Below are positions 5,330 through 38,650 of a DNA stretch of 64,000 bases, in pieces. The translations under genes and the position numbers were made by a program. Position 1 is the stretch's first letter, and each line of letters begins with the position of its first letter. The DNA lies in the IMG/VR virus record IMGVR_UViG_3300029258_003221, positions 1 through 64,000 of that record. The stretch is one strand, 5' to 3'. Under the pieces are notes generated by a model that worked only from the letters and a program-made list of their open reading frames with translations, was not told the origin of the DNA and did no database searches.

Positions 5330-5511
5330 TGAGTCAAATCAAAGACCTTATCGAAGAACTAAAATCTCTTACCCGTTATGACATGGAAGTCAGAGAATAT
5401 GGTCGAACCAAATTTCGTGATTCACATGCTGAAGCACGTGAAGTGGTTTCTGGAGATGGAGACTGGGTGGAGTGGGAAGATATTGTTTATTTGATCAAGG
5501 AGTATGAATGA
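5326..5511 (+). CDS. Hypothetical protein
   Basis: ORF track; GTGA overlap with the upstream gene. Confidence 0.6.
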   Translation: MMSQIKDLIEELKSLTRYDMEVREYGRTKFRDSHAEAREVVSGDGDWVEWEDIVYLIKEYE

Positions 5512-5521
5512 GTTTGAATGT

Positions 5522-5671
5522 GGGACAGAGGTGGATTGGTTCACACAAACCAACAATTTGTTGTTGGCCTGCATGGGTTCGAGTCCTGACAGGATGCAAT
5601 GAATTGTTGGGGAGGCAGAATTGCCAGCCGTTTTCGGAACGGCCTTGCAGGTTCGATTCCTGCCTGTCCCA
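5522..5671 (+). ncRNA. Expanded tRNA-like RNA (150 nt)
   Basis: Perfect acceptor stem GGGACAG/CTGTCCC; Leu-like D-arm; perfect T-arm GCAGG-TTCGATT-CCTGC; long variable arm GCCGTT-TTCG-GAACGGC; extra hairpins where the anticodon arm should be. Confidence 0.6.
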
Positions 5672-5676
5672 CTTAT

Positions 5677-5751
5677 GGGTGCGTAGCTCAATTGGCAGAG
5701 CAGCGAGTTCTAGCCTCGTGTTTGTTGCAGGTTCGATCCCTGTCGCACCTT
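5677..5751 (+). tRNA. tRNA with anticodon CTA (amber suppressor), Trp-like body, no encoded CCA
   Basis: Cloverleaf: GGGTGCG/CGCACCT; GCTC/GAGC; GCGAG-TTCTAGC-CTCGT (CTA at 5710-5712); GCAGG-TTCGATC-CCTGT. Confidence 0.85.
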
Positions 5752-5756
5752 TTTTA

Positions 5757-5914
5757 CCGCAGGTAGCTCAGTTGGTAGAGCGTTGCTTGTGTTGAAGCTA
5801 AGACAATGGTGTACAACATTGAATTAGTGAATGCACACGTGCTGTCAAAAGTGGCCACTTTTGGCTGTCATGTAAACATAGCAGAGGTCGGAGGTTCGAG
5901 TCCTCAACTGCGGA
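5757..5914 (+). ncRNA. tRNA-like gene whose anticodon loop is replaced by a 92-nt structured segment
   Basis: CCGCAGG/ACTGCGG; GCTC-AGTTGGTA-GAGC; anticodon stem TTGCT(5783-87)/AGCAG(5880-84); AGGTC; GGAGG-TTCGAGT-CCTCA. Confidence 0.65.
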
Positions 5915-5954
5915 ATATTTTCATTTTTCCCCGGATAGAAAGGAAGAAGTTGTG

Positions 5955-6356
5955 ATGTAGAAATGGCATTGGAATCAAAAACTTGGACCTGAAAACTGTC
6001 CATACATGGTGCGATGGGTGTTTGATTTTTACTTCTTCACCATTCGTATTCATCATTGGCTTCATAGTGACGATTTGCGTCACCCCCATGATCATCCTTG
6101 GTCTTTTTGGGCCATTTGTTTGTGGGGCGGATACACAGATGTTTCACCAGATGGCGAGGACCGAGTGCGACCGGGAAGTGTACGGTTTCGCTCGGCTCTT
6201 CACCAACATTCTGTTAAAGTTGATGAAGGTGGATGTTGGACCATCCTTTTGACAGGACGTGAGCATCGTCGTTGGGGTTTTTGGGTTAATGGTAAGTTTC
6301 GTAAAAGAAACAAGTATTTCTATATGATGGGTCATCACAATCCATGTGATTCATAA
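5955..6356 (+). CDS. Cupin-like phage protein with an in-frame TAG directly after the start (5958-5960)
   Basis: AAGGAAG RBS then GTG ATG TAG AAA TGG CAT TGG, giving M*KWHWNQKLGPENCPYMVRW...HHWLHSDDLRHPHDHPW; the ORF-track start 6006 lacks an RBS. Confidence 0.7.
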
Positions 6357-14044: not shown

Positions 14045-14589
14045 AGCAATTTCATGTTAATGTTTCCTCTAATTACCATTTCTCCACGAACATTCTGAAT
14101 ATGTTCATCACAAATTTCTTTTTGGCTTTCGTAAATGTCCACTAAAGCTACTTTTTCCTTCCAAACATCTTCTGGTAAATCCGGGCCATCAAAACAAAAT
14201 GTCCAAAGTTTATCCGAAGGTACAAGTTCACGCATTAGTTCGTTGATTTGCTTGTGATGGAGATGTCCGTATTCTCCATCTTCGTTGTGAGTGACGATTT
14301 TTGACCAATTTCTTTCATTGATGACACGTCTCAAATCTTCTCTTAATACATTGAAATCTAAAGGCGTAAAACGTTCATCGTGATAATCCCAAACTTCAAA
14401 TCTTGAATTGGTCACAAACATTACTTGCTGAAATTCGCCTTTGCGAATGGGATTTCGACCATTGGTAACACACACAACTTTCCAACCCGGTTCTGTTATT
14501 AACTGTGCTCCACCAAATAAAGATTCATCATCTGGGTGGGCTACGACCATAAGTTTATCAGGATCAGTGTTGACAGAAATTTCGCTCAT
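14041..14589 (-). CDS. PIG-L/LmbE family N-deacetylase
   Basis: VVAHPDDESLFGG and THNEDGEYGHLHH. Confidence 0.9.
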   Translation of the reverse strand: MSEISVNTDPDKLMVVAHPDDESLFGGAQLITEPGWKVVCVTNGRNPIRKGEFQQVMFVTNSRFEVWDYHDERFTPLDFNVLREDLRRVINERNWSKIVTHNEDGEYGHLHHKQINELMRELVPSDKLWTFCFDGPDLPEDVWKEKVALVDIYESQKEICDEHIQNVRGEMVIRGNINMKLL

Positions 14590-28781: not shown

Positions 28782-29837
28782 TTACTTGATATACCTGTAA
28801 TCCTCGCCAGCCTTCAAGCTTTTTACAGTATTATACATCAATTTAATTGTGCTCTTCACATCCTTCTTGTGAACCATTTCAACAGATGTATGCATGTACT
28901 TCAATGGCAAACTAATCAAACAGGAAGGAATTCCACCAGCAGCTTTGTAAAAAGCTCCTGTGTCCGTTCCACTGTTGCCATTGTATGTGCCGATCTGAAC
29001 TTTGACCTTACTCTTCTTGGCAACCTTCAAAACCTTCTTCAAAAGATTTCTCTGAACATCAGGACCATAATACAAAGCAGGCCCATTCCCGCATGACACA
29101 TCACCACACAATCGTGTATTATACATCGGTGAATGTGAATCATGTGTTACGTCTGTAATGATGGCCACATCCGGCTTGATACTGTGAGCAATCATGTGAG
29201 CGCCACACAAGCCTATCTCTTCCTGAACTGCATTTACTACATGCAAACCAAATGGAAGCTCGTCTTTCTTTTCCTTCAACATTCGAGCAACCTGAGCAAT
29301 CATATAACCGCCCATTCGATTGTCTAAAGCACGACACAAATAGTAATCACCCATGACCTCAAACGGAGCATCATAAGTCATCACACAACCAACATGAATT
29401 CCCATCTCCTCAACTTGCTTTTTGTTCTCAGCTCCAACATCAACATAAAGATTCTTAACCTTTGGTGTTTCTGAGTCACGCTCGTGAATAGCAAGCCAGC
29501 CAAATACGCCACGAACAGTTCCCTTTTGGCCAATTATGTTCACCCGTTGACCCGGAGCAACCATCTCATCTGATCCACCTCGGCGAACAACACTGATATA
29601 ACCCTTTTCATCAATGTGCGAGACTGTCCAACCAATTTCATCGGCATGAGCTTCAATCACCACTTTGTATTTGGCATCAGGGTTTACTACGGCAACTGCT
29701 GTCCCATAAGAATCACAGTATGTTTCATCAACATACTGTGAGATGTAGTCCAGCCAGATCTTCTGACCTTCGGTTTCCCAACCAGTGGGCGACTGAGCAT
29801 TCAAATAACTTTGTAGAAACTTCTCTCGCTTATTCAT
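28782..29837 (-). CDS. M42 family aminopeptidase
   Basis: EAHADEIG, ALDNRMG, VQEEIG, IITDVTH, LKYMHT. Confidence 0.93.
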   Translation of the reverse strand: MNKREKFLQSYLNAQSPTGWETEGQKIWLDYISQYVDETYCDSYGTAVAVVNPDAKYKVVIEAHADEIGWTVSHIDEKGYISVVRRGGSDEMVAPGQRVNIIGQKGTVRGVFGWLAIHERDSETPKVKNLYVDVGAENKKQVEEMGIHVGCVMTYDAPFEVMGDYYLCRALDNRMGGYMIAQVARMLKEKKDELPFGLHVVNAVQEEIGLCGAHMIAHSIKPDVAIITDVTHDSHSPMYNTRLCGDVSCGNGPALYYGPDVQRNLLKKVLKVAKKSKVKVQIGTYNGNSGTDTGAFYKAAGGIPSCLISLPLKYMHTSVEMVHKKDVKSTIKLMYNTVKSLKAGEDYRYIK

Positions 29838-30376
29838 CTTTCAAAATCCTTTTCGGTTAATGTCTTGTAATTCCGTCGCCATCTCCACGCATACTGCTCT
29901 TTCCAAATGTCAAATTTCTCTTCACCAAGATTTCTTTCAATCCATTTGCACAAATCATTTTTGCTGTAACCCAATGAATCGCCAAGTAAGATGTCTGTTG
30001 TAAGAACAGAAGCACCTGTGTTCATTCTAGTTGGGTCTTCTAAAAGTAAAAATGCGTACTCCGCTTGATGAATTCTCCAAATATTATCTGGAGAACAAAT
30101 ACCACCTTTATACATGTCGTCATGTCTGCTTTTAAGACACTCTATCGGATAATATTTAAAATCTTTTTGTCCAAAATATCGTTCAAATTGATTTGCCATT
30201 CGAGGGCTTGTAAGAGCCATTGGTTTTTTGCGGGTTATCAATAAAGCAAATTCCACATCATTGTGCGGGCCGATACTTCCATGTTCAGAAAGTAATTTAA
30301 TCTCAGTCCAATCAAAAGATAGAAACGAAGAAATCAACTCATCACAATCTGTTATCCAATCTTTTTTACTCATCAT
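29834..30376 (-). CDS. Hypothetical protein
   Basis: ORF track. Confidence 0.6.
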   Translation of the reverse strand: MMSKKDWITDCDELISSFLSFDWTEIKLLSEHGSIGPHNDVEFALLITRKKPMALTSPRMANQFERYFGQKDFKYYPIECLKSRHDDMYKGGICSPDNIWRIHQAEYAFLLLEDPTRMNTGASVLTTDILLGDSLGYSKNDLCKWIERNLGEEKFDIWKEQYAWRWRRNYKTLTEKDFER

Positions 30377-30600
30377 TAATGTATCATGACCACTCGATTA
30401 GTTTTCTCTTTTAATTCTTCTGAATCAAAAATACTGACAGACCAACAATCCACTTCGTCATCAGACAATACCGACAAGTCTACAAAATTAGCCAATTCTA
30501 TGTAAGCCAAGTTAACACAACCAACAGAAACATAAACATCTAATTCCGGGTCAAACTCTGACAACTTTTCAATTAAATCTTTAACCTTCATCGAAACCAT
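30376..30600 (-). CDS. Hypothetical protein
   Basis: MKVKDLIEKLSEFDPELDV, a common small phage motif. Confidence 0.6.
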   Translation of the reverse strand: MVSMKVKDLIEKLSEFDPELDVYVSVGCVNLAYIELANFVDLSVLSDDEVDCWSVSIFDSEELKEKTNRVVMIH

Positions 30601-30868
30601 ATTTCTCTAATAATTCACTACATTGTGATTCACCATAGCCTTCTTCAAAGCAACCATTTTCATTAAGCTTAAGCAATACTTCATCTGATTGTTCTTCTAA
30701 GACAATGATGTGCATTTTCAATCTATTTACATCATCTTCAGCAGAAGTCGGTTTAAATCATCATCTCTTTGATTAAATGAAAATCCTACAATAGGAATTG
30801 CTCCTATCATCTTCAACACACTTCTTCTATCTACTTTCATTTTTAAACTCCTCTTTTCATCGTAAATT

Positions 30869-31075
30869 TTAGTCCTCAAATTTCACTTCTAACAAGTCTT
30901 CTGGGAGACCGCCTGTTATCATCAAAAATTCTCCAGCATCTTTCTTCTCAAAAGATAACCCTAAAGCCTCCAAAACATCATCAGCTTCAATTCTGTGATT
31001 CTGGAATTTTAGCTTACCGTCCACATAAAGACCAGACCAATCGTCGCCGTACACTAATGTAATTTGATTAGTCAT
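30869..31075 (-). CDS. Hypothetical protein
   Basis: Start refined to ATG 31075 (MTNQITLVYG). Confidence 0.6.
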   Translation of the reverse strand: MTNQITLVYGDDWSGLYVDGKLKFQNHRIEADDVLEALGLSFEKKDAGEFLMITGGLPEDLLEVKFED

Positions 31076-31202
31076 TTTCAATTCTTTCCAATAGAAAAAA
31101 ACCATCGTTTTCCAATTGAATTGCGTAAGGCACATCTTCAAAAAGGTAAGCGTAGATTTCTGTTTTCACATCATTTACCAAAGCTTCTTTATGCTCACAA
31201 TA
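31068..31202 (-). pseudogene. 3' half of the 78-codon gene split by the IS607 element
   Basis: YCEHKEALVNDVKTEIYAYLFEDVPYAIQLENDGFFLLERIEND*; joins in frame to 35891-35790 across the GG core. Confidence 0.8.
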
Positions 31203-31336
31203 CCGTTCCTGAAAACCTACGGAAATCTAGGATACGCAAAAATGCCCTAAATTCCTTGTTCCATTCCTGCTTCATTGAGGCTGGTTTCACTCAAAACTAC
31301 AAGTTTCAAGCCAGAGCCTTCCTCTCCACAAGCGTT

Positions 31337-32443
31337 TCATATCTCCGTCGAACTGGCGGCGATGTATTCTAAATTACAACTGGCATTGAAGTCTCGGTCG
31401 TGGTGAGTTCCACATCCATCGCAATCCCATTCTCGGTCTGCCAAGGTCAAGTTTTGATTGATCTGACCGCAAATCGAACATGCTTTGCTGGATGGGAAGA
31501 AACGATCCACAGGGACGATCCTGCATCCATACCAAGTTCCTTTATATTCCAGTTGTCTTCTACACTCGAAAAATCCAATATCTGCGATTGATCGAGATAA
31601 TCTTCTGTTCTTCAACATTCCAGACACATTCAAGTCTTCAATTCCAATCGCACGCTTGGTTTTCGCTAATGCTGTTGTCATCTTGTGTAATGTATCTTTA
31701 CGAATGTTGCTGATCTTGAAGTAGAGCCGAGCAAGACGGTTCGCCGCTTTCTTTCGGTTCTGACTTCCTTTTTGTTTGCGACTCAAACTTCTGTTGAGCC
31801 GCTTGAGTTTCCTTAGTTTTTTCTTGAGCGGTTTCGGGTTCTCAAAGGTTGTCCCATCGCTCACGGTTGCCAGTGTTTTGATCCCCAAATCCATACCAAC
31901 CACATCATGTTCGTCCTTCTGGATATTGGGTTCTAACATATCTTCTTCAACTTGAATGCTGACAAACCACCTACCTGCTCTTTCACTTACAGTTGCCGAC
32001 AATATCTTGGCATCGGTTGGCAGGTATCCACTTTCTTTGAGTTTTAGTTTTCCAAGTCTCGGAAGTTGGATTGTTTTCTCTGTTACTTTGATCGTTCCCG
32101 TCAGTCGAAACCCGCCGATGCCTTTTCTCTTACTCTTGAATTTCGGGAACTTTCCTCGCTTCTTGAAGAAATTGTCAAAAGCACGATCTAGGTTTCTAAG
32201 GGCTTCCTGTGGGCTACATTTGCTGACTTCATACATCCAAGGGAATGTATCTTTCTTGAGGTCGTTGAGGCGACGGTGAAGTTCAATGGCGTTGGGAATC
32301 TTATCTTTGACTTCCATCGCTTGCTTCTTCTGGTTCATGCCCCAATTATATGTGAACCTAGCAGCACCAGCATGTTTTAGACATGCGGTTCGCTGCTTGT
32401 TGTTCAACCTCAATTCGGTCTTATAGCCCCTCTGTATCTTCAC
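31337..32443 (-). CDS. tnpB: TnpB RNA-guided nuclease
   Basis: RuvC I VGMDLGIK, RuvC II GIEDLNV, zinc finger CSICG...CDGCG, RuvC III DRDFNAS. Confidence 0.96.
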   Translation of the reverse strand: MKIQRGYKTELRLNNKQRTACLKHAGAARFTYNWGMNQKKQAMEVKDKIPNAIELHRRLNDLKKDTFPWMYEVSKCSPQEALRNLDRAFDNFFKKRGKFPKFKSKRKGIGGFRLTGTIKVTEKTIQLPRLGKLKLKESGYLPTDAKILSATVSERAGRWFVSIQVEEDMLEPNIQKDEHDVVGMDLGIKTLATVSDGTTFENPKPLKKKLRKLKRLNRSLSRKQKGSQNRKKAANRLARLYFKISNIRKDTLHKMTTALAKTKRAIGIEDLNVSGMLKNRRLSRSIADIGFFECRRQLEYKGTWYGCRIVPVDRFFPSSKACSICGQINQNLTLADREWDCDGCGTHHDRDFNASCNLEYIAASSTEI

Positions 32444-32861
32444 ACTCCTCCTCTGCTATGAACTTGCCGAAATCATGTTCATTGAACTCAGCAGTTTCAT
32501 AGACATCCCATCCAAGAACAACAGGGTCTTCGCCAACAGGCAAAGGCTGTCCATGTCCATCTAACAATGTGCCATCACGTTTTACATCAATGTGTTTAGC
32601 TCGCCAGCCATCGTACCAAAAGCCACCACGATTGAATGTGATGCAACCTTTGGGTTTGTATTCAACAACAATGTCAAATGTTGCTTCCTGCCCCATACTA
32701 ACAGGCTTGCGTTGCTTGAATTCTTTGATCTTGCAACTTTTGGGTTCTTTGCTCATCCACTCTGTTTCATTCAACTTATTCATTAGACCAAACATCAACT
32801 TTGTTGGGTCTTTCGTAACCAACTCGAACTTCAAGTAAGTTGGATTCACATTATCGGTCAT
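32421..32861 (-). CDS. Cargo hypothetical protein
   Basis: ORF track; overlaps both neighbours. Confidence 0.7.
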   Translation of the reverse strand: MTDNVNPTYLKFELVTKDPTKLMFGLMNKLNETEWMSKEPKSCKIKEFKQRKPVSMGQEATFDIVVEYKPKGCITFNRGGFWYDGWRAKHIDVKRDGTLLDGHGQPLPVGEDPVVLGWDVYETAEFNEHDFGKFIAEEECEDTEGL

Positions 32862-34849
32862 GCAACCTCCTTCAAATAATGTTCTCTCGCCGCCGCAGCT
32901 TCCTCTATGGTGTCATAAGTCCCGACACTTTGACGACCAACTCTTGCTGACCATCTCCCATTGGCTTGTTTGTAAACACCCTTATGTCCAGAGCCAGCCA
33001 ATTTTTGGCAATCGCATTTTGAGTTTGCCTTCATATTGCCGGGCAATCGTTGAAACTCTTTGCCATGCTCGCACCTGACTGTCACATACTCAAAAAATCC
33101 AGCATATTCTGACGCCAACTCCCACCCTTTATCCTCAAGAAACTGCAACAATTTTTGCTTTCCGTAATCCAAGCAGTTAGTTCTTACACAATCGCATTGG
33201 GCGTGTGGCCGCACGGCAGATCGACGCTTCATAGTGAAAACTTCACCATGTTCGCACCTAATTTGGATTTCACCCTCGCCACTATATTCAGATAGCAACT
33301 CCCACCCACGATTGGCAAAGATTTCAGTCAAGTTATCCTTACCCATCTCAGTCATTCTTTCGCCAGAGGCGATGTCGCAACAACGTGGACAACCACACTC
33401 GTTCTTGAAGTTCTGCACCAGCGTCGTCCAGACATGACCCTTATCGCACTGGATGGTCATATCTCCGTAGTATCCTTTATACTCCGAGAGACGCTTCCAG
33501 CCCCTCCGCTCCATCTCAGTGTCAATAATTTGAGTTTGGTGTTCTTTATCTTGCGGACGTTTAGATGAATAATCCCAAGAGTAGAATTTCTCTTTCTTGC
33601 AATCCATCGAAACAGACGAATCTTCGTAAAGCCAATCTCTAATTCGGAGTGCTGGCGTTCCACTGTAGCTGAACAATGACGCTGTGGAGTTCTTTAGTTC
33701 TCGATCATACTCCTCTTTGCTTCGGTCTATCACAGTATTCTTCGAGACATTGGCTTCTTCAACAATGACATCCACCACATCCTCAAGGAATTTAGGAACA
33801 GCCCCGCAAATGCTGAATGTTGGAGTTTTGTAAACCTTATGCCTGTATTTCGTAGTGCCAACGCTCACTGACCCGTCGCCATCGAAAAGTCCTCGGATGA
33901 AGTGTCTTCTCAACTCTTTAGGAATATCAGGAAAAGAAACAAGAAAGGTTTTGTTCGGAATAACGCCATGTTTCATCAAGGCTTCTACGAAACCAGTGTG
34001 ACAACATTCAAGAGTGTATTTGGTTTTCTTTCCGCCCTTATTTTTGCTGCTCACATGATATGGACCAAGAACCTTGCCTGTATATCCGATTGCATCCTTG
34101 AACTTCTCTAAATGTCTCTTCCCTTCTACAACCAACGAAATACGAAGCCGGTGTGGATTGAGTGCAACTGATCCGTCTGCATAGATGAACCCAAGCCAAT
34201 ATGCCTTTTCTTCTGTGTCTATCTCATCAAAGAAGTTGAAATCAAATGTGTATTTTCTAATCAAACCAGCAGAGCGGCGACTGCCAACTTTCAGTGTTAC
34301 TGCACGCCCGATGATGGCATTCCAAGTTCTATTGGGCAAGCCAGCTTGGATGAACTCTTGACTTTCCTTGGTGTAACTTGAGCGAAGAAAATCATCTTCC
34401 TCAGATGACCACGAAAAATCAGGCTTACTCAAGCCCAGTTTGACCGCCTTGTTCCTAATCTCGGATTCAGTCTTGTCTGAAAGCAATTCAAGCAATTCCG
34501 AATTGCTCATGGTGGCATAATTGGATTTCAACAAATCTAACTCTTTAGAAGTCCATTTCTTTCGCTTTCTGGTAAGCCCCAATCGGCAGGCTCTATCTTT
34601 GATTGCCTTGTATTTGCGGTTCGGAAGCAAATTCGACCATTGATCGGCTGCGATCTTGCCATAATACTGCCTGACAACATCATCTTCCGCCAACTGCCAT
34701 TTAGTATCTTGCGTCAAGCCAAGCCGAGATAATTTGTGTCTTATAGAAGTGTCACTCTTATCCAACTCGTTACTCAACCAATCAGTCGGTTTATCCGCAT
34801 TTTCTACAAGAAATGCCTCTTCTTTCTTAGTCCAATGCTTTCCGCTCAT
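32858..34849 (-). CDS. Multidomain LAGLIDADG endonuclease: 4 Myb-like repeats, double LAGLIDADG, 3 Zn-ribbon repeats, AP2-like domain
   Basis: WTxxE repeats; YWLGFIYADGSV and FIRGLFDGDGSV; GW.LLSEY...C..GH...C repeats; SGHKGVY...GRWSARV...GTYDTIEEAAAAR. Confidence 0.9.
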   Translation of the reverse strand: MSGKHWTKKEEAFLVENADKPTDWLSNELDKSDTSIRHKLSRLGLTQDTKWQLAEDDVVRQYYGKIAADQWSNLLPNRKYKAIKDRACRLGLTRKRKKWTSKELDLLKSNYATMSNSELLELLSDKTESEIRNKAVKLGLSKPDFSWSSEEDDFLRSSYTKESQEFIQAGLPNRTWNAIIGRAVTLKVGSRRSAGLIRKYTFDFNFFDEIDTEEKAYWLGFIYADGSVALNPHRLRISLVVEGKRHLEKFKDAIGYTGKVLGPYHVSSKNKGGKKTKYTLECCHTGFVEALMKHGVIPNKTFLVSFPDIPKELRRHFIRGLFDGDGSVSVGTTKYRHKVYKTPTFSICGAVPKFLEDVVDVIVEEANVSKNTVIDRSKEEYDRELKNSTASLFSYSGTPALRIRDWLYEDSSVSMDCKKEKFYSWDYSSKRPQDKEHQTQIIDTEMERRGWKRLSEYKGYYGDMTIQCDKGHVWTTLVQNFKNECGCPRCCDIASGERMTEMGKDNLTEIFANRGWELLSEYSGEGEIQIRCEHGEVFTMKRRSAVRPHAQCDCVRTNCLDYGKQKLLQFLEDKGWELASEYAGFFEYVTVRCEHGKEFQRLPGNMKANSKCDCQKLAGSGHKGVYKQANGRWSARVGRQSVGTYDTIEEAAAAREHYLKEVA

Positions 34850-35532
34850 ACCTCCACAACCTCTTTCTGTTCCGCAGGCACAAGACCATCTTGTGCTACC
34901 GCCGCCAACTTCTCTTCTTTCTTTTTCCTGCGATTTTCAGCACTACGCTTGCCGTAAATCTTATTGCTGAACGAGGACATCAATGTGAGCATATCTTCTA
35001 CAAGTTCTTGCTCGTAGGACTTGCCCAACACATTCTCCATCCACTCGATCTGAACACCATGACTGGCGAAGAAGTCGTCCAAGAATTGAAAGTTGAAGCG
35101 AGTCAAACGATCTTTGTGTTCGACCACAACCTTGCTGATCTTCTTGTCCTTGACCAACTCAAACAGGTTTCTCAACTTCGGTCTGGTGTCCGACATGCCT
35201 GATCCTACTTCTTCGTAGGATTTGACAATCTTGTACTGCTTCTTGACGCAGTAGGACAAGAGCCGCCCGTTCTGTCGTTCTAGGTCGCCCTTTTTCTTCT
35301 GTTCGTGGGAACTTACTCTTGCGTAAGTTGCGACCTTGACTTCACTTTCTTTCTTGTGTTCCACGATCTCGCCGCAGAAGGCTTTGATGTCTGATAATCT
35401 GTACCTTCTGTGATTTCCCGGCGTTTTGACTGGAACTAGCTTTCCTTCTTTATCCCATTCTCTGAGCGTATCGAGGCAGACACCGAGGATGTCGGCTGTT
35501 TTACCGATGCTCAACAACTTCTGTTCGTTCAT
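34846..35532 (-). CDS. tnpA: IS607 serine-recombinase transposase
   Basis: MerR-like HTH (TLREWDKEG...TPGNHRRY); YARVSS; VVEHKDRLTRF; ELVEDML; start refined to ATG 35532. Confidence 0.96.
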   Translation of the reverse strand: MNEQKLLSIGKTADILGVCLDTLREWDKEGKLVPVKTPGNHRRYRLSDIKAFCGEIVEHKKESEVKVATYARVSSHEQKKKGDLERQNGRLLSYCVKKQYKIVKSYEEVGSGMSDTRPKLRNLFELVKDKKISKVVVEHKDRLTRFNFQFLDDFFASHGVQIEWMENVLGKSYEQELVEDMLTLMSSFSNKIYGKRSAENRRKKKEEKLAAVAQDGLVPAEQKEVVEV

Positions 35533-35704
35533 TCTCAATGAGTCCTTTTTCAAGGAACGCATCGAGCCATTCATCGTATTGTTCCTGAAACTCCTCTACT
35601 GTCGGTGTTTCCTCCAAATCAAAGAGAATCGGATGGATCGTACCATCCTCCATCTCAAACTCGGTTTTGGTTACTCTAACGATTTTTCGACTCAACATGT
35701 TCAT
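35501..35704 (-). CDS. Small acidic protein, first ORF inside the IS607 element
   Basis: AGGAGAG RBS; overlaps the tnpA start. Confidence 0.65.
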   Translation of the reverse strand: MNMLSRKIVRVTKTEFEMEDGTIHPILFDLEETPTVEEFQEQYDEWLDAFLEKGLIENERTEVVEHR

Positions 35705-35789
35705 TCTCTCTCCTATAATAGTCGTCTCAACTTCATTTTTTCTTTAGCAATCCGTAGATTTTCCGAGATTTTTCTTCAACTGCTTAGAA

Positions 35790-35891
35790 CCCTCCACTCA
35801 AAGTTTGATATTCGATGAACTGACTTCTTAAAGCTTCACTTGAGAGGCCAACCATTTCGATCTTTGGTCCTATTACTTTGTAACTTTCCAT
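35790..35891 (-). pseudogene. 5' half of the gene split by the IS607 element
   Basis: AGGAAAGG RBS; MESYKVIGPKIEMVGLSSEALRSQFIEYQTLSGG, then runs into the element. Confidence 0.8.
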
Positions 35892-36028
35892 TCAATCGCC
35901 TTTCCTTTGTAAATTTCGAATGAATTTTTCAACGCTGAAGGATATGGACGCTTAGGGTCTTGTAAAATTCTTAAACGTATCATTAAAATCAAAAATCCAT
36001 TTTTTAGCTCATCTTTGTTGATGTCCAT
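35873..36028 (-). CDS. Hypothetical protein (51 aa, not in the track)
   Basis: MDINKDELKNG...; AAAGGA RBS. Confidence 0.45.
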   Translation of the reverse strand: MDINKDELKNGFLILMIRLRILQDPKRPYPSALKNSFEIYKGKAIEWKVTK

Positions 36029-36051
36029 TTATCCTTTTAACCTCTTTAAAT

Positions 36052-36240
36052 TTATGAGCCTCTTGAGTTACGGGCGATCAAGTTATCGACCAAAAATTCA
36101 GCGATCTGACCGTTGTCCAACATCACTTTGTAATGTTCTTTGTCATCTATCCAACGGTCTAATACAATTGCATCATGTCGTTCTCTTGGTTCACTATGAG
36201 AGAATGCCACAACATGAGATTTGTCAGCAAATTTGAACAT
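36052..36240 (-). CDS. Hypothetical protein
   Basis: ORF track. Confidence 0.55.
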   Translation of the reverse strand: MFKFADKSHVVAFSHSEPRERHDAIVLDRWIDDKEHYKVMLDNGQIAEFLVDNLIARNSRGS

Positions 36241-36722
36241 TATTCAGCCATTTCTTGAATTTTAAAATTCAACACGTTTTTTCTTTTATACTCCTGAACG
36301 TCCTCGAATGTCATTCCTATGAATTTACCTAAAGGTATGTCGGTCTCCGTCTCAGGATCATCATACTGTAAAATCGATAACTCTAAGTCATCATAGGAAT
36401 ACGTTTCATTAGCTTCGTGATTGAGATTCTTGAATTCGTAAATCATGTTACGCTTCCATTCATCTCTGTTTGTGTTCCCATTCGTGTATGTTAAGATTAA
36501 ATCTGGAGCAGAATAAACATCGATTCTTGCCTTGTCATAGTGGCTTTCAGGCTCTTCATCAAAGAACTTAAGCAACACACGTTTGTTTGGATTGTCAACT
36601 TCCAATTTAGTGACAATCAACTGATTGTTTAGAATGTGTCTAACTGGATTACCCATTTTTCTCGGCCTCTTCAACGGCCATATGATACAAGCCTTCAAAC
36701 CAATTTGTGATCCCGTCGCCAT
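36240..36722 (-). CDS. Hypothetical protein
   Basis: ORF track; true start may be later. Confidence 0.55.
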   Translation of the reverse strand: MATGSQIGLKACIIWPLKRPRKMGNPVRHILNNQLIVTKLEVDNPNKRVLLKFFDEEPESHYDKARIDVYSAPDLILTYTNGNTNRDEWKRNMIYEFKNLNHEANETYSYDDLELSILQYDDPETETDIPLGKFIGMTFEDVQEYKRKNVLNFKIQEMAE

Positions 36723-37513: not shown

Positions 37514-38623
37514 TTATTTCACCTTTGCCGCCTTTCTACGGCACTCTTTGCACCGGGTAGCATAGCCATCGCTCTTAGAACTGTCTACCCCAAACTCTTC
37601 GAACAACTTCACGTCCTTGCATCCATTGCACAACTTCTTACCCTCGGCAGCATAGGGATTTACCTTCTTCCTCTTAGACCTCTTTCCAGCAATGGAGCCT
37701 CCCTCACGCTCACAGATGTAACGACCATTTCGGGCAATGTTCTTCTCGTGGGTCTTCCTGAGAACCGTGTGAGTCTCATTACAAAAATTGCATTCGACTT
37801 CGACAGTGTCTTTGGCAATCTTCTCGTCGTAATGCTTCTTGGCTTTCTTACGATTTAGCTCTTTTCTGTGCTCCACATAATCTACTCCATGGAGTTTACT
37901 CATTTCCTCATCAGCCCATTTGGTTGCTTCTCTGTCATTTTCAAAGCCAAGTTCGGCCTCAGACCATATCTCAAAATCGTAACCATTTCGATCAGCATAA
38001 GTCATGTTATCCATGATTTGAATTTGAACTTTGTGTGACTGAAGCATTCGTTTGGGTTTTACTTCTACCAACTTTGACTCATTGATCAAGAAGTCAGCAC
38101 TTCGATCACGTCCGTCAATTTTGAATCCAATTTGAACTTCGTATGTTTTCACACTGTCGTCTGCTTCTAGCAACAATATGGCCTTGAGTTCATAGGATGA
38201 TTGGAACGGGAAGGTTTTTCCCATTTTCTTTGATTGGTAAACACCTCTTCTGCGGGTGGGCTCAAAGTCATTGTTCCTATGACGTTTTGTTGTCAATCCT
38301 GCAAGGTATTTCTTCAAACGCTTGCCTTCAGGCGTGGCCCACTTTTTGTTAGCTGAATCACGCATTTTCTGTTTTGTTGCTTTGGACCTTTTGTAGCTGG
38401 TCGCTTCGGCAATGCGTTGGCGTCCCTCTTCAGTGTACACACGAGTGGGGATAGCATTTGCTGTGGCACACTTCTGGCAGATGTATTTGCCGTTCTTTTG
38501 GATGTTCTCTTTGGCCTTGAATTTACCGGGATGCTTTGTTGTGCCACATTGTTCGCAATCTATGGAAATGTGATCTTTGGCTCGAACCCCTGCATAGATT
38601 TGCTCAAACTCTTTTACATTCAT
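37514..38623 (-). CDS. TnsA-like PD-(D/E)XK endonuclease with Zn-ribbon and basic helical segments
   Basis: PFQSSYELKAILLLEADDSV...ADFLI...LVEVKP; several CxxC; AGGAG RBS at ATG 38623. Confidence 0.8.
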   Translation of the reverse strand: MNVKEFEQIYAGVRAKDHISIDCEQCGTTKHPGKFKAKENIQKNGKYICQKCATANAIPTRVYTEEGRQRIAEATSYKRSKATKQKMRDSANKKWATPEGKRLKKYLAGLTTKRHRNNDFEPTRRRGVYQSKKMGKTFPFQSSYELKAILLLEADDSVKTYEVQIGFKIDGRDRSADFLINESKLVEVKPKRMLQSHKVQIQIMDNMTYADRNGYDFEIWSEAELGFENDREATKWADEEMSKLHGVDYVEHRKELNRKKAKKHYDEKIAKDTVEVECNFCNETHTVLRKTHEKNIARNGRYICEREGGSIAGKRSKRKKVNPYAAEGKKLCNGCKDVKLFEEFGVDSSKSDGYATRCKECRRKAAKVK

Positions 38624-38650
38624 AGCTTTCTCCTTAATCTCTAACATCGG

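What the first reader, a model, noticed from the sequence alone, without database searches (positions are those of the whole stretch)
31203..35791. IS607 element carrying cargo between tnpA and tnpB, boundaries supported by ORF restoration
Seen: order small ORF - tnpA(serine) - 663-aa LAGLIDADG protein - 146-aa ORF - tnpB, each overlapping the next. Joining the flanks at one GG (AGT GGA GG|G TAT TGT) yields a clean 78-codon gene, MESYK...LSGG-YCEHK...IEND*, whose stop overlaps the next start. Related repeats sit at both ends (aaaatctcggaaaatctacgg; aaaacctacggaaatctagg). Established: IS607 tnpA and tnpB are normally directly adjacent. Inference: a composite element with a transposase, an RNA-guided nuclease and a protein-guided homing endonuclease in one coupled operon.
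Basis: partly seen in the sequence, partly recalled or inferred. Interest (0 to 1): 0.88.

Follow-up and report, generated by a model that had tools for sequence, protein, structure and literature searches.

The report
IS607 transposon carrying a homing-endonuclease cassette
A 4.6-kb IS607-type jumping gene sits inside a small gene of an uncultured jumbo phage, and a nearly identical phage genome lacks it; a swappable homing-endonuclease gene is nested between its transposase and its RNA-guided nuclease, an arrangement noted only briefly in the literature.

Summary
Contig L002 matches the window over 21.4 kb with one mismatch.

The insert is an IS607-family element. It has a MerR-HTH serine recombinase TnpA, TnpB, a GG core and no target-site duplication. 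Sub-terminal repeats sit at both ends. A structured RNA lies 3' of tnpB, and the left flank reads 5'-GAGGG, a published IS607 TnpB TAM.

- **orf67:** this is not cargo. It is a core gene of a large phage-borne IS607 subfamily.
- **The 663-aa gene:** a near-identical backbone (95.6%/89% nt, L137) carries an unrelated zinc-ribbon homing-endonuclease gene in the same place. L091 (93%/92% nt) carries only a 109-aa ORF.
- **orf146:** this is a rare accessory gene. It was always found just upstream of tnpB, and a nuclease gene precedes it in every copy whose upstream sequence is held.
- **Relatives of the LAGLIDADG protein:** six of the eight whose contigs were read (seven with flanking sequence) are free-standing.

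Best reading: a recently mobile IS607 with a nested, exchangeable homing-endonuclease gene. Altae-Tran et al. 2023 mention such cargo in one sentence, so I file it as a new variant of a known kind. Interest is moderate.

The parts
31203..35789 (-). Whole IS607-family element, 4,587 bp. It begins TTCTAAGCAG and ends ...CAGGAACGG, counting one copy of the GG core.
   Evidence: Absent from L002, which is otherwise identical (1 mismatch in 21.4 kb). Homology to related elements L091, L092 and L137 stops at these ends.
35790..35794 (-). Left-flank target motif 5'-GAGGG, holding the TAM and the GG core dinucleotide.
   Evidence: 12 of 12 independent insertions of related elements have GGG at -3..-1, and 10 of 12 have A at -4. 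GAGGG is a published IS607 TnpB TAM (PMC11061315).
35705..35789 (-). Left end with two direct copies of the AATCTnCGG motif (about 35769-35749), the presumed TnpA binding sites.
   Evidence: I13. Conserved in L091, L092, L082 and L137.
35501..35704 (-). orf67, a small conserved protein that is a core gene of this IS607 subfamily. Function unknown.
   Evidence: Found upstream of tnpA in most related loci. 12-sequence alignment. More than 2,000 homologues. AF2 pLDDT 78, but no fold match.
34846..35574 (-). tnpA, a serine recombinase with an N-terminal MerR-like HTH. The likely true start is the ATG at 35532 (MNEQKLLSIG).
   Evidence: Pfam Resolvase 2.8e-23 plus HTH_17/MerR. Best PDB sequence matches are IS607-family TnpA catalytic domains 6dgc, 3ilx and 6dgb. 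The start is inferred from alignment A2.
32858..34849 (-). 663-aa LAGLIDADG homing-endonuclease-like gene. It has N-terminal Myb/SANT-like repeats, two LAGLIDADG motifs (aa 217-228 and 317-328), three zinc-ribbon-like repeats and a C-terminal AP2 domain. The swappable cassette spans about 34873..32877.
   Evidence: Both catalytic Asp motifs are invariant in 14 relatives. Replaced by an unrelated nuclease gene in the 95.6%/89% nt-identical backbone L137.
32421..32861 (-). orf146, a rare accessory gene directly upstream of tnpB. Function unknown.
   Evidence: Five homologues in the 90%-identity clustered search and 94 representatives by profile search. Present in L082, L085, L089, L137, L142 and L143, always upstream of tnpB; a nuclease gene precedes it wherever the upstream sequence is held. 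No Pfam or PHROG hit. AF2 pLDDT 51.
31337..32443 (-). tnpB, an RNA-guided nuclease with GTG start. The RuvC D-E-D motifs (GMDLG, IEDLN, DRDFNA) are present.
   Evidence: Pfam OrfB_IS605 7e-33, TNB 2e-20 and HTH_OrfB. PDB TnpB matches 8h1j, 8bf8 and 8iaz.
31203..31395 (-). Predicted reRNA (omega-RNA) scaffold. It overlaps the tnpB 3' end and runs to the right end. It contains a RAGATH-18-like core (31332..31264) and the right-end repeats (31231..31203), and ends ...AACGG.
   Evidence: Rfam RAGATH-18 scores 25.7 bits, below the 44.9 gathering score. The same position scores 29.1 bits in L085. RNAalifold on 12 elements gives 35 pairs, 19-21 of them with compensatory changes and 92% paired, against 38-57% for slid partners.
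31183..31202 (-). Right flank (TATTGTGAGCATAAAGAAGC), the sequence the reRNA guide would copy. In the empty allele it sits directly 3' of GAGGG.
   Evidence: In the window the only near match is preceded by AACGG, not a TAM.
35790..35891 (-). N-terminal 34 codons of the interrupted phage gene orf78. In the occupied allele it reads on into the element for one codon (F) and then stops.
31068..31202 (-). C-terminal 44 codons plus stop of orf78. The next gene's ATG is at 31075.
   Evidence: Intact in L002 at 14315-14548.

Best explanation
The insert is a recently mobile IS607-family transposon of a phage-borne subfamily. Its core is orf67, tnpA, tnpB and an reRNA.

**Shown.** The 4,587-bp unit sits 3' of a GAGGG motif in a 78-codon phage gene. 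There is no duplication, and an otherwise identical genome carries the scarless empty site.

**Inferred from the biology of the family.**
- TnpA, a serine recombinase, excises the element as a circle and integrates it at GG.
- TnpB, loaded with an reRNA transcribed across the right end, recognises TAM (GAGGG) plus the 20-nt right flank. That combination exists only in the empty allele.
- Cleavage of empty copies, either after excision or in a co-infecting phage genome, lets recombination copy the element back in. The right end itself reads AACGG (C at -3) and so escapes cleavage.

**The cargo has two layers.**
- orf146 is a rare accessory gene tied to tnpB.
- The 663-aa LAGLIDADG gene is a free-standing-type homing-endonuclease gene nested between tnpA and orf146.
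- Unrelated nuclease genes occupy exactly the same site in near-identical backbones. The nuclease gene therefore most likely spreads on its own among IS607 copies by endonuclease-stimulated recombination (intronless homing).
- It rides the transposon and uses its operon for expression, rather than serving transposition.
For: **Empty and occupied alleles.**

**IS607 hallmarks.** (proteins; end repeats; AGGG flank in 12 of 12 insertions).

**TAM and self/non-self logic.** These match published work: the GAGGG TAM (PMC11061315) and TGGG versus TCGG discrimination at -3 (bioRxiv 10.1101/2023.11.20.567912).

**reRNA.**

**Cassette behaviour.**
- L137 is 95.6% nt identical over the left end and tnpA, and 89% over orf146, tnpB and the right end. 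It carries a 550-aa DUF723/DUF4379 protein that hits the PHROG families 'homing endonuclease' and 'intron encoded nuclease' in place of LAG663.
- L091 is 93%/92% identical on either side but has a 109-aa ORF instead of the whole slot, with sharp breakpoints.
- L143 has a third, unrelated LAGLIDADG gene in the slot, plus nuclease genes interrupting tnpA and tnpB.
- Of the eight closest LAG663 relatives whose contigs were read, six are free-standing and two (L082, L134) sit in IS607; for one of the six (L135) the contig starts 45 nt upstream, so the left side is unseen.

**Likely active enzyme.** Both LAGLIDADG catalytic Asp motifs are invariant in 14 relatives.
Against: - No activity was tested. 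The target of the LAGLIDADG enzyme is unknown.
- No nuclease-less tnpA-orf146-tnpB element, the predicted homing recipient, was found among the few lineages sampled.
- The tight translational coupling (ATGA overlaps) and the constant pairing of a nuclease gene with orf146 could instead mean the pair has a function for the element.
- The LAGLIDADG tree is unresolved, so one capture versus several cannot be decided.
- The RAGATH-18 match is below Rfam's gathering score.
- Whether L002 is the ancestral site or a scarless excision product cannot be told.
Confidence: 0.7

Rival explanations
1. Integrated three-enzyme element. The LAGLIDADG protein and orf146 are working parts of the transposon. They could provide a second, protein-guided drive, a DNA-binding target selector or regulator, or a weapon against competing phage genomes. 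On this view they were selected together with tnpA and tnpB in one operon.
For: - All five ORFs overlap and face the same way.
- A nuclease gene plus orf146 recurs in at least five lineages (window, L082, L085, L137, L143).
- orf146 divergence roughly tracks TnpB divergence.
- The protein carries many DNA-binding modules (Myb-like, zinc-ribbon, AP2).
Against: - A protein with fixed specificity cannot follow an element that inserts at many AGGG sites.
- Unrelated nuclease families substitute for one another in backbones 89-96% nt identical, and close relatives L091 and L092 do without any nuclease.
- Six of the eight relatives of the protein whose contigs were read lie outside any IS.
- In L143 nuclease genes break tnpA and tnpB themselves, which is parasitic behaviour.
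Confidence: 0.2
2. Passive passenger. The cargo was picked up once by illegitimate recombination and is simply carried. On this view the LAGLIDADG protein is inactive or domesticated, for example as a DNA-binding regulator like WhiA, and there is no homing.
For: - Other members of the subfamily carry non-nuclease cargo: DUF4238, helicase with methyltransferases, lipoprotein-like ORFs and a 109-aa ORF.
- The literature describes such cargo as 'WhiA/meganuclease-like'.
Against: - Both catalytic Asp residues are invariant.
- The ORF is intact at 51% identity between lineages.
- Precise replacement by another endonuclease gene at the same site is the signature of homing genes, not of random capture.
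Confidence: 0.08
3. Assembly artefact. On this view the insertion is a chimeric join in one metagenome assembly.
For: None, beyond the general risk with metagenomic contigs.
Against: - An independent contig (L141) covers the element and its right junction at 100% identity.
- Both junctions have canonical IS607 features shared with about 12 other insertions.
- The empty site is scarless and in frame.
Confidence: 0.02

Closest known systems
IS607 family insertion sequences (IS607 of Helicobacter pylori, IS1535, ISC1904/ISC1926; the ISFba1 TnpB-reRNA system)
   Same: - TnpA is a serine recombinase with a MerR-like HTH at the N-terminus.
- tnpB lies downstream.
- There is a GG core, no duplication, no terminal inverted repeats, and sub-terminal repeats at both ends.
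- A RAGATH-18-type RNA lies 3' of tnpB.
- The G-rich TAM (GAGGG) coincides with the insertion site.
   Different: - The element is 4.6 kb with five ORFs, instead of about 2 kb with two.
- It has an extra conserved small gene (orf67) upstream of tnpA.
- Two extra genes lie between tnpA and tnpB.
- The RNA scaffold is shorter and overlaps the tnpB 3' end. Only about 134 nt lie between the tnpB stop and the right end, against about 187 nt of non-coding scaffold in ISFba1.
Cargo-bearing serine-recombinase/TnpB transposons ('Ser-3' branch) noted by Altae-Tran et al. 2023 (PMC10691335)
   Same: [quoted passage not shown] Here I see LAGLIDADG cargo (window, L082, L134, L143) and helicase plus methyltransferase cargo (L096, L110).
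   Different: - Whether this element belongs to their Ser-3 branch was not tested.
- The passages of that paper retrieved here give one sentence and a figure on such cargo and mention no empty site, cassette exchange, orf146 or phage context; the full text was not read.
IStrons (for example CboIStron: IS607 or IS605 fused to a group I intron)
   Same: Both are IS607 backbones that host a second kind of selfish genetic device. Both are inserted in the sense orientation inside a host gene.
   Different: No group I intron was detected (Rfam E-value mode). The interrupted gene is therefore probably not rescued by splicing. Here the added device is a protein endonuclease gene, not a ribozyme.
Free-standing homing endonuclease genes of T4-like phages (seg and mob genes; intronless homing)
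   Same: Unrelated endonuclease genes alternate at one precise position between conserved neighbours in closely related backbones. The DNA-binding architecture is modular.
   Different: Here the conserved neighbours are genes of a transposon (tnpA and orf146), not essential phage genes. The homing gene is therefore itself carried to new loci by transposition.

Membership tests
IS607 family | Serine-recombinase transposase with an N-terminal MerR-like HTH and a C-terminal catalytic domain | tested here: met
   Pfam Resolvase (aa 82-221) and HTH_17/MerR (aa 20-66). PDB sequence hits to IS607-family TnpA 6dgc, 3ilx and 6dgb.
IS607 family | tnpB (RuvC-like OrfB plus zinc ribbon) downstream of tnpA on the same strand | tested here: met
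   The D-E-D motifs can be read in the translation.
IS607 family | Insertion at a GG dinucleotide, with no target-site duplication and scarless empty site | tested here: met
   Occupied versus empty alleles share only GG(T) at the junction. GGG flanks 12 of 12 related insertions.
IS607 family | Short repeated motifs at both ends instead of long terminal inverted repeats | tested here: met
   (I13). A 26-nt right-end block is conserved across the subfamily.
IS607 family | reRNA/omega-RNA (RAGATH-18 type) running to the right end, with a TAM in the left flank | tested here: inconclusive
   The Rfam RAGATH-18 match is below the gathering score (25.7 and 29.1 bits against 44.9). Covariation does support a conserved structure, and the flank GAGGG equals a published TAM. 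No RNA data were available.
IS607 family | Compact element of about 1.7-2.5 kb encoding only tnpA and tnpB (size range from my own knowledge of ISfinder) | tested here: not met
   The element is 4,587 bp with five ORFs. Canonical relatives of the same subfamily are 2.1-2.2 kb with orf67, tnpA and tnpB.
IS607 family | Transposition through a circular double-stranded intermediate | not testable with these tools
   This needs reads or PCR across the RE-GG-LE junction.
LAGLIDADG homing endonucleases | Two LAGLIDADG motifs, each ending in a catalytic acidic residue (monomeric type) | tested here: met
   LGFIYADGS (aa 219-227) and GLFDGDGS (aa 320-327). Both are invariant in 14 relatives. Pfam LAGLIDADG_3 and PHROG 4645.
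LAGLIDADG homing endonucleases | Site-specific cleavage of an allele that lacks the gene | not testable with these tools
   The target is unknown. No nuclease-less tnpA-orf146 allele was found.
Free-standing homing endonuclease gene (intronless homing) | Presence, absence or replacement at one precise site between conserved neighbours in closely related genomes | tested here: met
   Window versus L137 (a different nuclease gene), L091 (none) and L143 (a third nuclease gene).
IStron | Group I intron ribozyme at the 5' end of the element | tested here: not met
   No intron family reached E <= 1 in window 30500-36500. Rfam's intron models are not very sensitive.

The most novel reading that the evidence does not exclude
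In phages, the slot between tnpA and tnpB of this IS607 subfamily may be a dedicated landing pad where homing-endonuclease genes compete. orf146 would be either their conserved target or their partner. The result would be a two-tier gene drive. TnpB with its reRNA would drive the whole transposon into empty alleles of co-infecting phage genomes. The protein endonuclease would drive its own cassette, and perhaps flanking IS sequence, from one IS607 copy to another. The co-existing occupied and empty alleles found here would be a natural population in which an RNA-guided drive in a virus could be measured directly.
Probability: 0.3. Interest if true: 0.7.

Novelty: new variant of a known kind. 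Interest (0 to 1): 0.55.

Why it matters
TnpB-mediated 'restorative homing' has been shown in bacteria in the laboratory. Here a phage population holds both the occupied and the scarless empty allele, on backbones that differ by 1 mismatch in 21.4 kb. The TAM and guide target are reconstituted only in the empty allele. That makes RNA-guided homing between co-infecting viral genomes directly testable by read mapping or a simple plasmid assay.

The finding also shows that an IS usually described as carrying only tnpA and tnpB can be a vehicle, and a habitat, for other selfish genes. At least three unrelated endonuclease genes alternate at one site inside the transposon. This is parasitism nested three deep: homing gene in transposon in phage.

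There is a practical side too. The subfamily offers compact TnpB/reRNA pairs with an AGGG-type TAM, and LAGLIDADG enzymes with unusual DNA-binding add-ons.

Tried and rejected
- **IStron or group I intron.** I looked because a LAGLIDADG gene and a sense-strand insertion in a gene suggested it. Rfam in E-value mode found none.
- **Isolated phage relatives.** Megablast found nothing. The distant mode found only short tnpB matches to Microcystis and Nodularia phages.
- **Other copies of the 4.6-kb unit in IMG/VR.** Searches with the 663-aa protein or orf146 returned only the source contig.
- **Function of orf146.**
  - No Pfam or PHROG hit for it or for its longer relatives.
  - The AF2 model was too poor (pLDDT 51) to search.
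- **Function of orf67.** The model was decent (pLDDT 78), but there was no significant PDB fold match.
- **Broader orf146 alignment (A6).** It was too diverse for the locus finder. The narrower one found only four metagenome loci.
- **Right-end 26-mer in GTDB genomes.** One hit, in a Tepidisphaerales MAG contig with a 65%-identical tnpB. This gives no host clue.
- **LAGLIDADG tree.** The 14-member clade is a polytomy, so one capture versus several is undecided.
- **orf78 and its neighbours in 80 relatives of the capsid gene.** They are present only in L002, so conservation of the target gene could not be assessed.
- **Not done.** I did not hand the joined 78-aa protein to the database tools. 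The natural intact copy in L002 made that unnecessary.

Full report
**1. The observation**

All genes of the region lie on the minus strand. In order they are orf67 (35704..35501), tnpA (35574..34846), a 663-aa ORF (34849..32858), a 146-aa ORF (32861..32421) and tnpB (32443..31337). Each overlaps the next.

- Pfam gives Resolvase plus MerR/HTH_17 for TnpA.
- It gives OrfB_IS605, the Cas12f1-like zinc-ribbon domain and HTH_OrfB for TnpB.
- It gives LAGLIDADG_3 for the 663-aa protein. The two small ORFs have no hit. PHROGs agree.

GC content rises from about 0.35 in the flanks to about 0.44 inside. The window is a phage: the major head, portal and large terminase genes lie just upstream on the same strand. 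The capsid protein is closest (75.6% aa) to an uncultured 595-kb phage.

**2. The boundaries are proven by a natural empty site**

The window comes from IMGVR_UViG_3300029258_003221, a 234.6-kb contig. A second contig, L002 (IMGVR_UViG_3300017987_000083, 70 kb), aligns to the window over all 21,437 bp held, with one mismatch. The alignment jumps from window 35789 to 31204 with a 3-bp overlap (GGT).

The insert is therefore 4,587 bp (35789..31203 if one GG is counted with the right end).

A third contig from another dataset (L141) is 100% identical across most of the element and its right junction. The insertion is therefore not an assembly artefact, and occupied and empty alleles both exist in nature.

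orf78 and its small low-GC neighbours are found only in L002 among 80 capsid relatives. The target is an orphan gene in a variable region.

**3. It is an IS607-family element with an apparently intact homing system**

TnpA matches the solved IS607-family catalytic domains. TnpB matches solved TnpB structures over its whole length.

They are in inverted orientation and conserved in a dozen related elements. There is no duplication. The junctions share GG.

In 12 independent insertions of related elements, the three bases before the left end are always GGG. The base before them is A in 10 of 12.

In the window the flank reads GAGGG, one of the two TAMs determined for IS607 TnpBs (PMC11061315). 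The right end reads AACGG, with C at -3. This is the same self/non-self rule shown for CboTnpB, TGGG versus TCGG (10.1101/2023.11.20.567912).

TAM plus the 20-nt right flank are adjacent only in the empty allele.

The 3' region has a weak RAGATH-18 match directly after tnpB (25.7 bits, below gathering). L085 has one at the same place (29.1 bits).

A 12-element alignment folds into 35 pairs:
- 19-21 pairs have compensatory changes.
- 92% of cells are paired, against 38-57% when partners are slid and at most 82% in 500 shuffles.
- The structure was derived from the same alignment, so this is supportive, not decisive.

**4. What is core and what is cargo**

A search with three TnpAs found 38 viral loci. 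I annotated them by tblastn and by the end motifs.

*Core genes.* orf67 precedes tnpA in most of these loci. It aligns well across elements and has more than 2,000 homologues. It is a core gene of this subfamily, of unknown function (no fold match). Canonical members (L092, L093, L094, L102, L106, L109) are 2.1-2.2 kb with orf67, tnpA and tnpB.

*Cargo in other members.* These carry different genes between tnpA and tnpB:
- a 109-aa ORF (L091);
- DUF4238 (L095);
- a helicase with Eco57I-like and N6 methyltransferases, 5-7.5 kb (L096, L110);
- four lipoprotein-like ORFs (L114).

**5. The cargo in the window has two layers**

*orf146.* This family is rare: five clusters in the 5.8-billion-protein collection and 94 representatives by profile search. 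In every locus I could read (L082, L085-88, L089, L137, L142, L143) it sits directly upstream of tnpB. Wherever the upstream sequence is held, a nuclease gene precedes it.

*The nuclease gene varies.*

| Locus | Gene in the slot |
|---|---|
| Window, L082 | LAG663-type LAGLIDADG (51% aa to each other) |
| L137, L085 | Zinc-ribbon (DUF723/DUF4379) proteins that hit the PHROG families 'homing endonuclease' and 'intron encoded nuclease' |
| L143 | A third, unrelated LAGLIDADG ORF |

*The decisive comparison is L137.*
- It is 95.6% nt identical to the window from the left end through tnpA (to window 34874).
- It is 89% identical from 32876 through orf146, tnpB and the right end.
- Only the nuclease ORF is replaced.

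*L091.* It is 93% and 92% nt identical on either side, with flat identity up to sharp breakpoints. The whole slot is replaced by a 109-aa ORF.

*Trees.* In the TnpA and TnpB trees the window pairs with L091. Cargo states are interspersed with cargo-less elements.

*Relatives of the LAGLIDADG protein.* Of the eight closest relatives whose contigs I read, six are free-standing in phage or bacterial contigs (L083, L084, L128-131, L132, L133, L135). For L135 the contig begins 45 nt upstream of the gene, so its left side is unseen. Two are in IS607 (L082, L134). The clade is unresolved. Both catalytic Asp motifs are invariant.

**6. Mechanism**

*Shown:*
- insertion and scarless-absence alleles;
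- family hallmarks;
- TAM-and-target logic;
- cassette replacement.

*Inferred:*
- TnpA moves the 4.6-kb unit through a circle at GG.
- TnpB with its reRNA cuts empty alleles, so that recombination restores or spreads the element, including between co-infecting phage genomes.
- The LAGLIDADG gene is a nested homing gene. It spreads among IS607 copies and uses the operon for expression.

Two observations keep the integrated-function rival alive at about 0.2. A nuclease gene is paired with orf146 in every locus where the upstream sequence could be read, and the translational coupling is tight.

**7. Comparison with what is known**

Everything fits IS607 except size and gene content.

Altae-Tran et al. 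[quoted passage not shown] The architecture has therefore been seen.

My literature searches found no description of the following:
- an empty-site pair in a phage;
- the exchange of endonuclease cassettes at a fixed site inside the IS;
- orf146;
- endonuclease genes breaking tnpA and tnpB.

The library searched holds open-access papers and preprints only.

**8. Verdict**

I file it as a new variant of a known kind. Interest is 0.55. The find is solid and well documented and makes TnpB homing in viruses testable, but the headline architecture is not unprecedented and no function was found for orf146.

Noticed in passing
L113:5912-7001 and L143:1528-3089 (also L144): In two related elements tnpA is split just before the catalytic-serine codons (after ...AVRV). 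The 1.1-1.5 kb insert encodes a 312-321 aa LAGLIDADG protein. This could be an intron-borne or a free-standing homing gene inside the transposase gene.
   Followed up: partly
L143:5401-6388: The same element has tnpB reduced to N- and C-terminal pieces around an ORF (5461..6267) that carries an HNH-like motif. One IS607 copy therefore holds three nuclease genes.
   Followed up: no
L096:6244-11017 and L110:7717-13063: IS607 elements of 7-7.5 kb carry a ResIII-type helicase, an Eco57I-like methylase and an N6-methyltransferase between tnpA and tnpB. This could be a mobile modification or restriction module in phage contigs.
   Followed up: partly
L095:7642-8604; L114:7682-9519; L091:7693-8022: Other cargos occupy the same slot: a DUF4238 protein (with frameshifted tnpB), four lipoprotein-like small ORFs, and a 109-aa orphan ORF whose last codons overlap the tnpB start exactly as those of orf146 do.
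   Followed up: partly
L082:8335-9600: This element has a second, different LAGLIDADG gene (421 aa, with an endonuclease-VII-like zinc-finger N-terminus) between orf141 and tnpB. It therefore carries two homing-type genes in one slot.
   Followed up: partly
P0125 (673-bp ENA contig); P0254-P0262 and others: The orf146-like domain also occurs as the first ~145 residues of proteins of about 310 aa with no Pfam or PHROG match. In one short contig it is fused behind an ADP-ribosylglycohydrolase fragment.
   Followed up: partly
window 37514-38647 (-): A 377-aa ORF between the element region and the major head gene has a C-terminal endonuclease-VII/Lar-like zinc-finger domain. It may be another mobile nuclease gene.
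   Followed up: no
window 29800-31200 and 35800-36400: This low-GC (about 0.35) stretch of small orphan ORFs downstream of the capsid gene is shared only with L002 among 80 capsid-gene relatives. It is a hypervariable region and hosts the insertion.
   Followed up: partly
P0015 (931 aa, JGI contig of 26 kb): This distant LAGLIDADG relative is named by its source as a Pin-like DNA invertase and has several HTH domains. It may be a recombinase-type protein fused to a LAGLIDADG domain.
   Followed up: no
L146 (JBBQNJ010000018.1, Tepidisphaerales MAG): This is the only GTDB species-representative genome with the exact right-end 26-mer. Next to it lies a tnpB 65% identical to the window's.
   Followed up: partly
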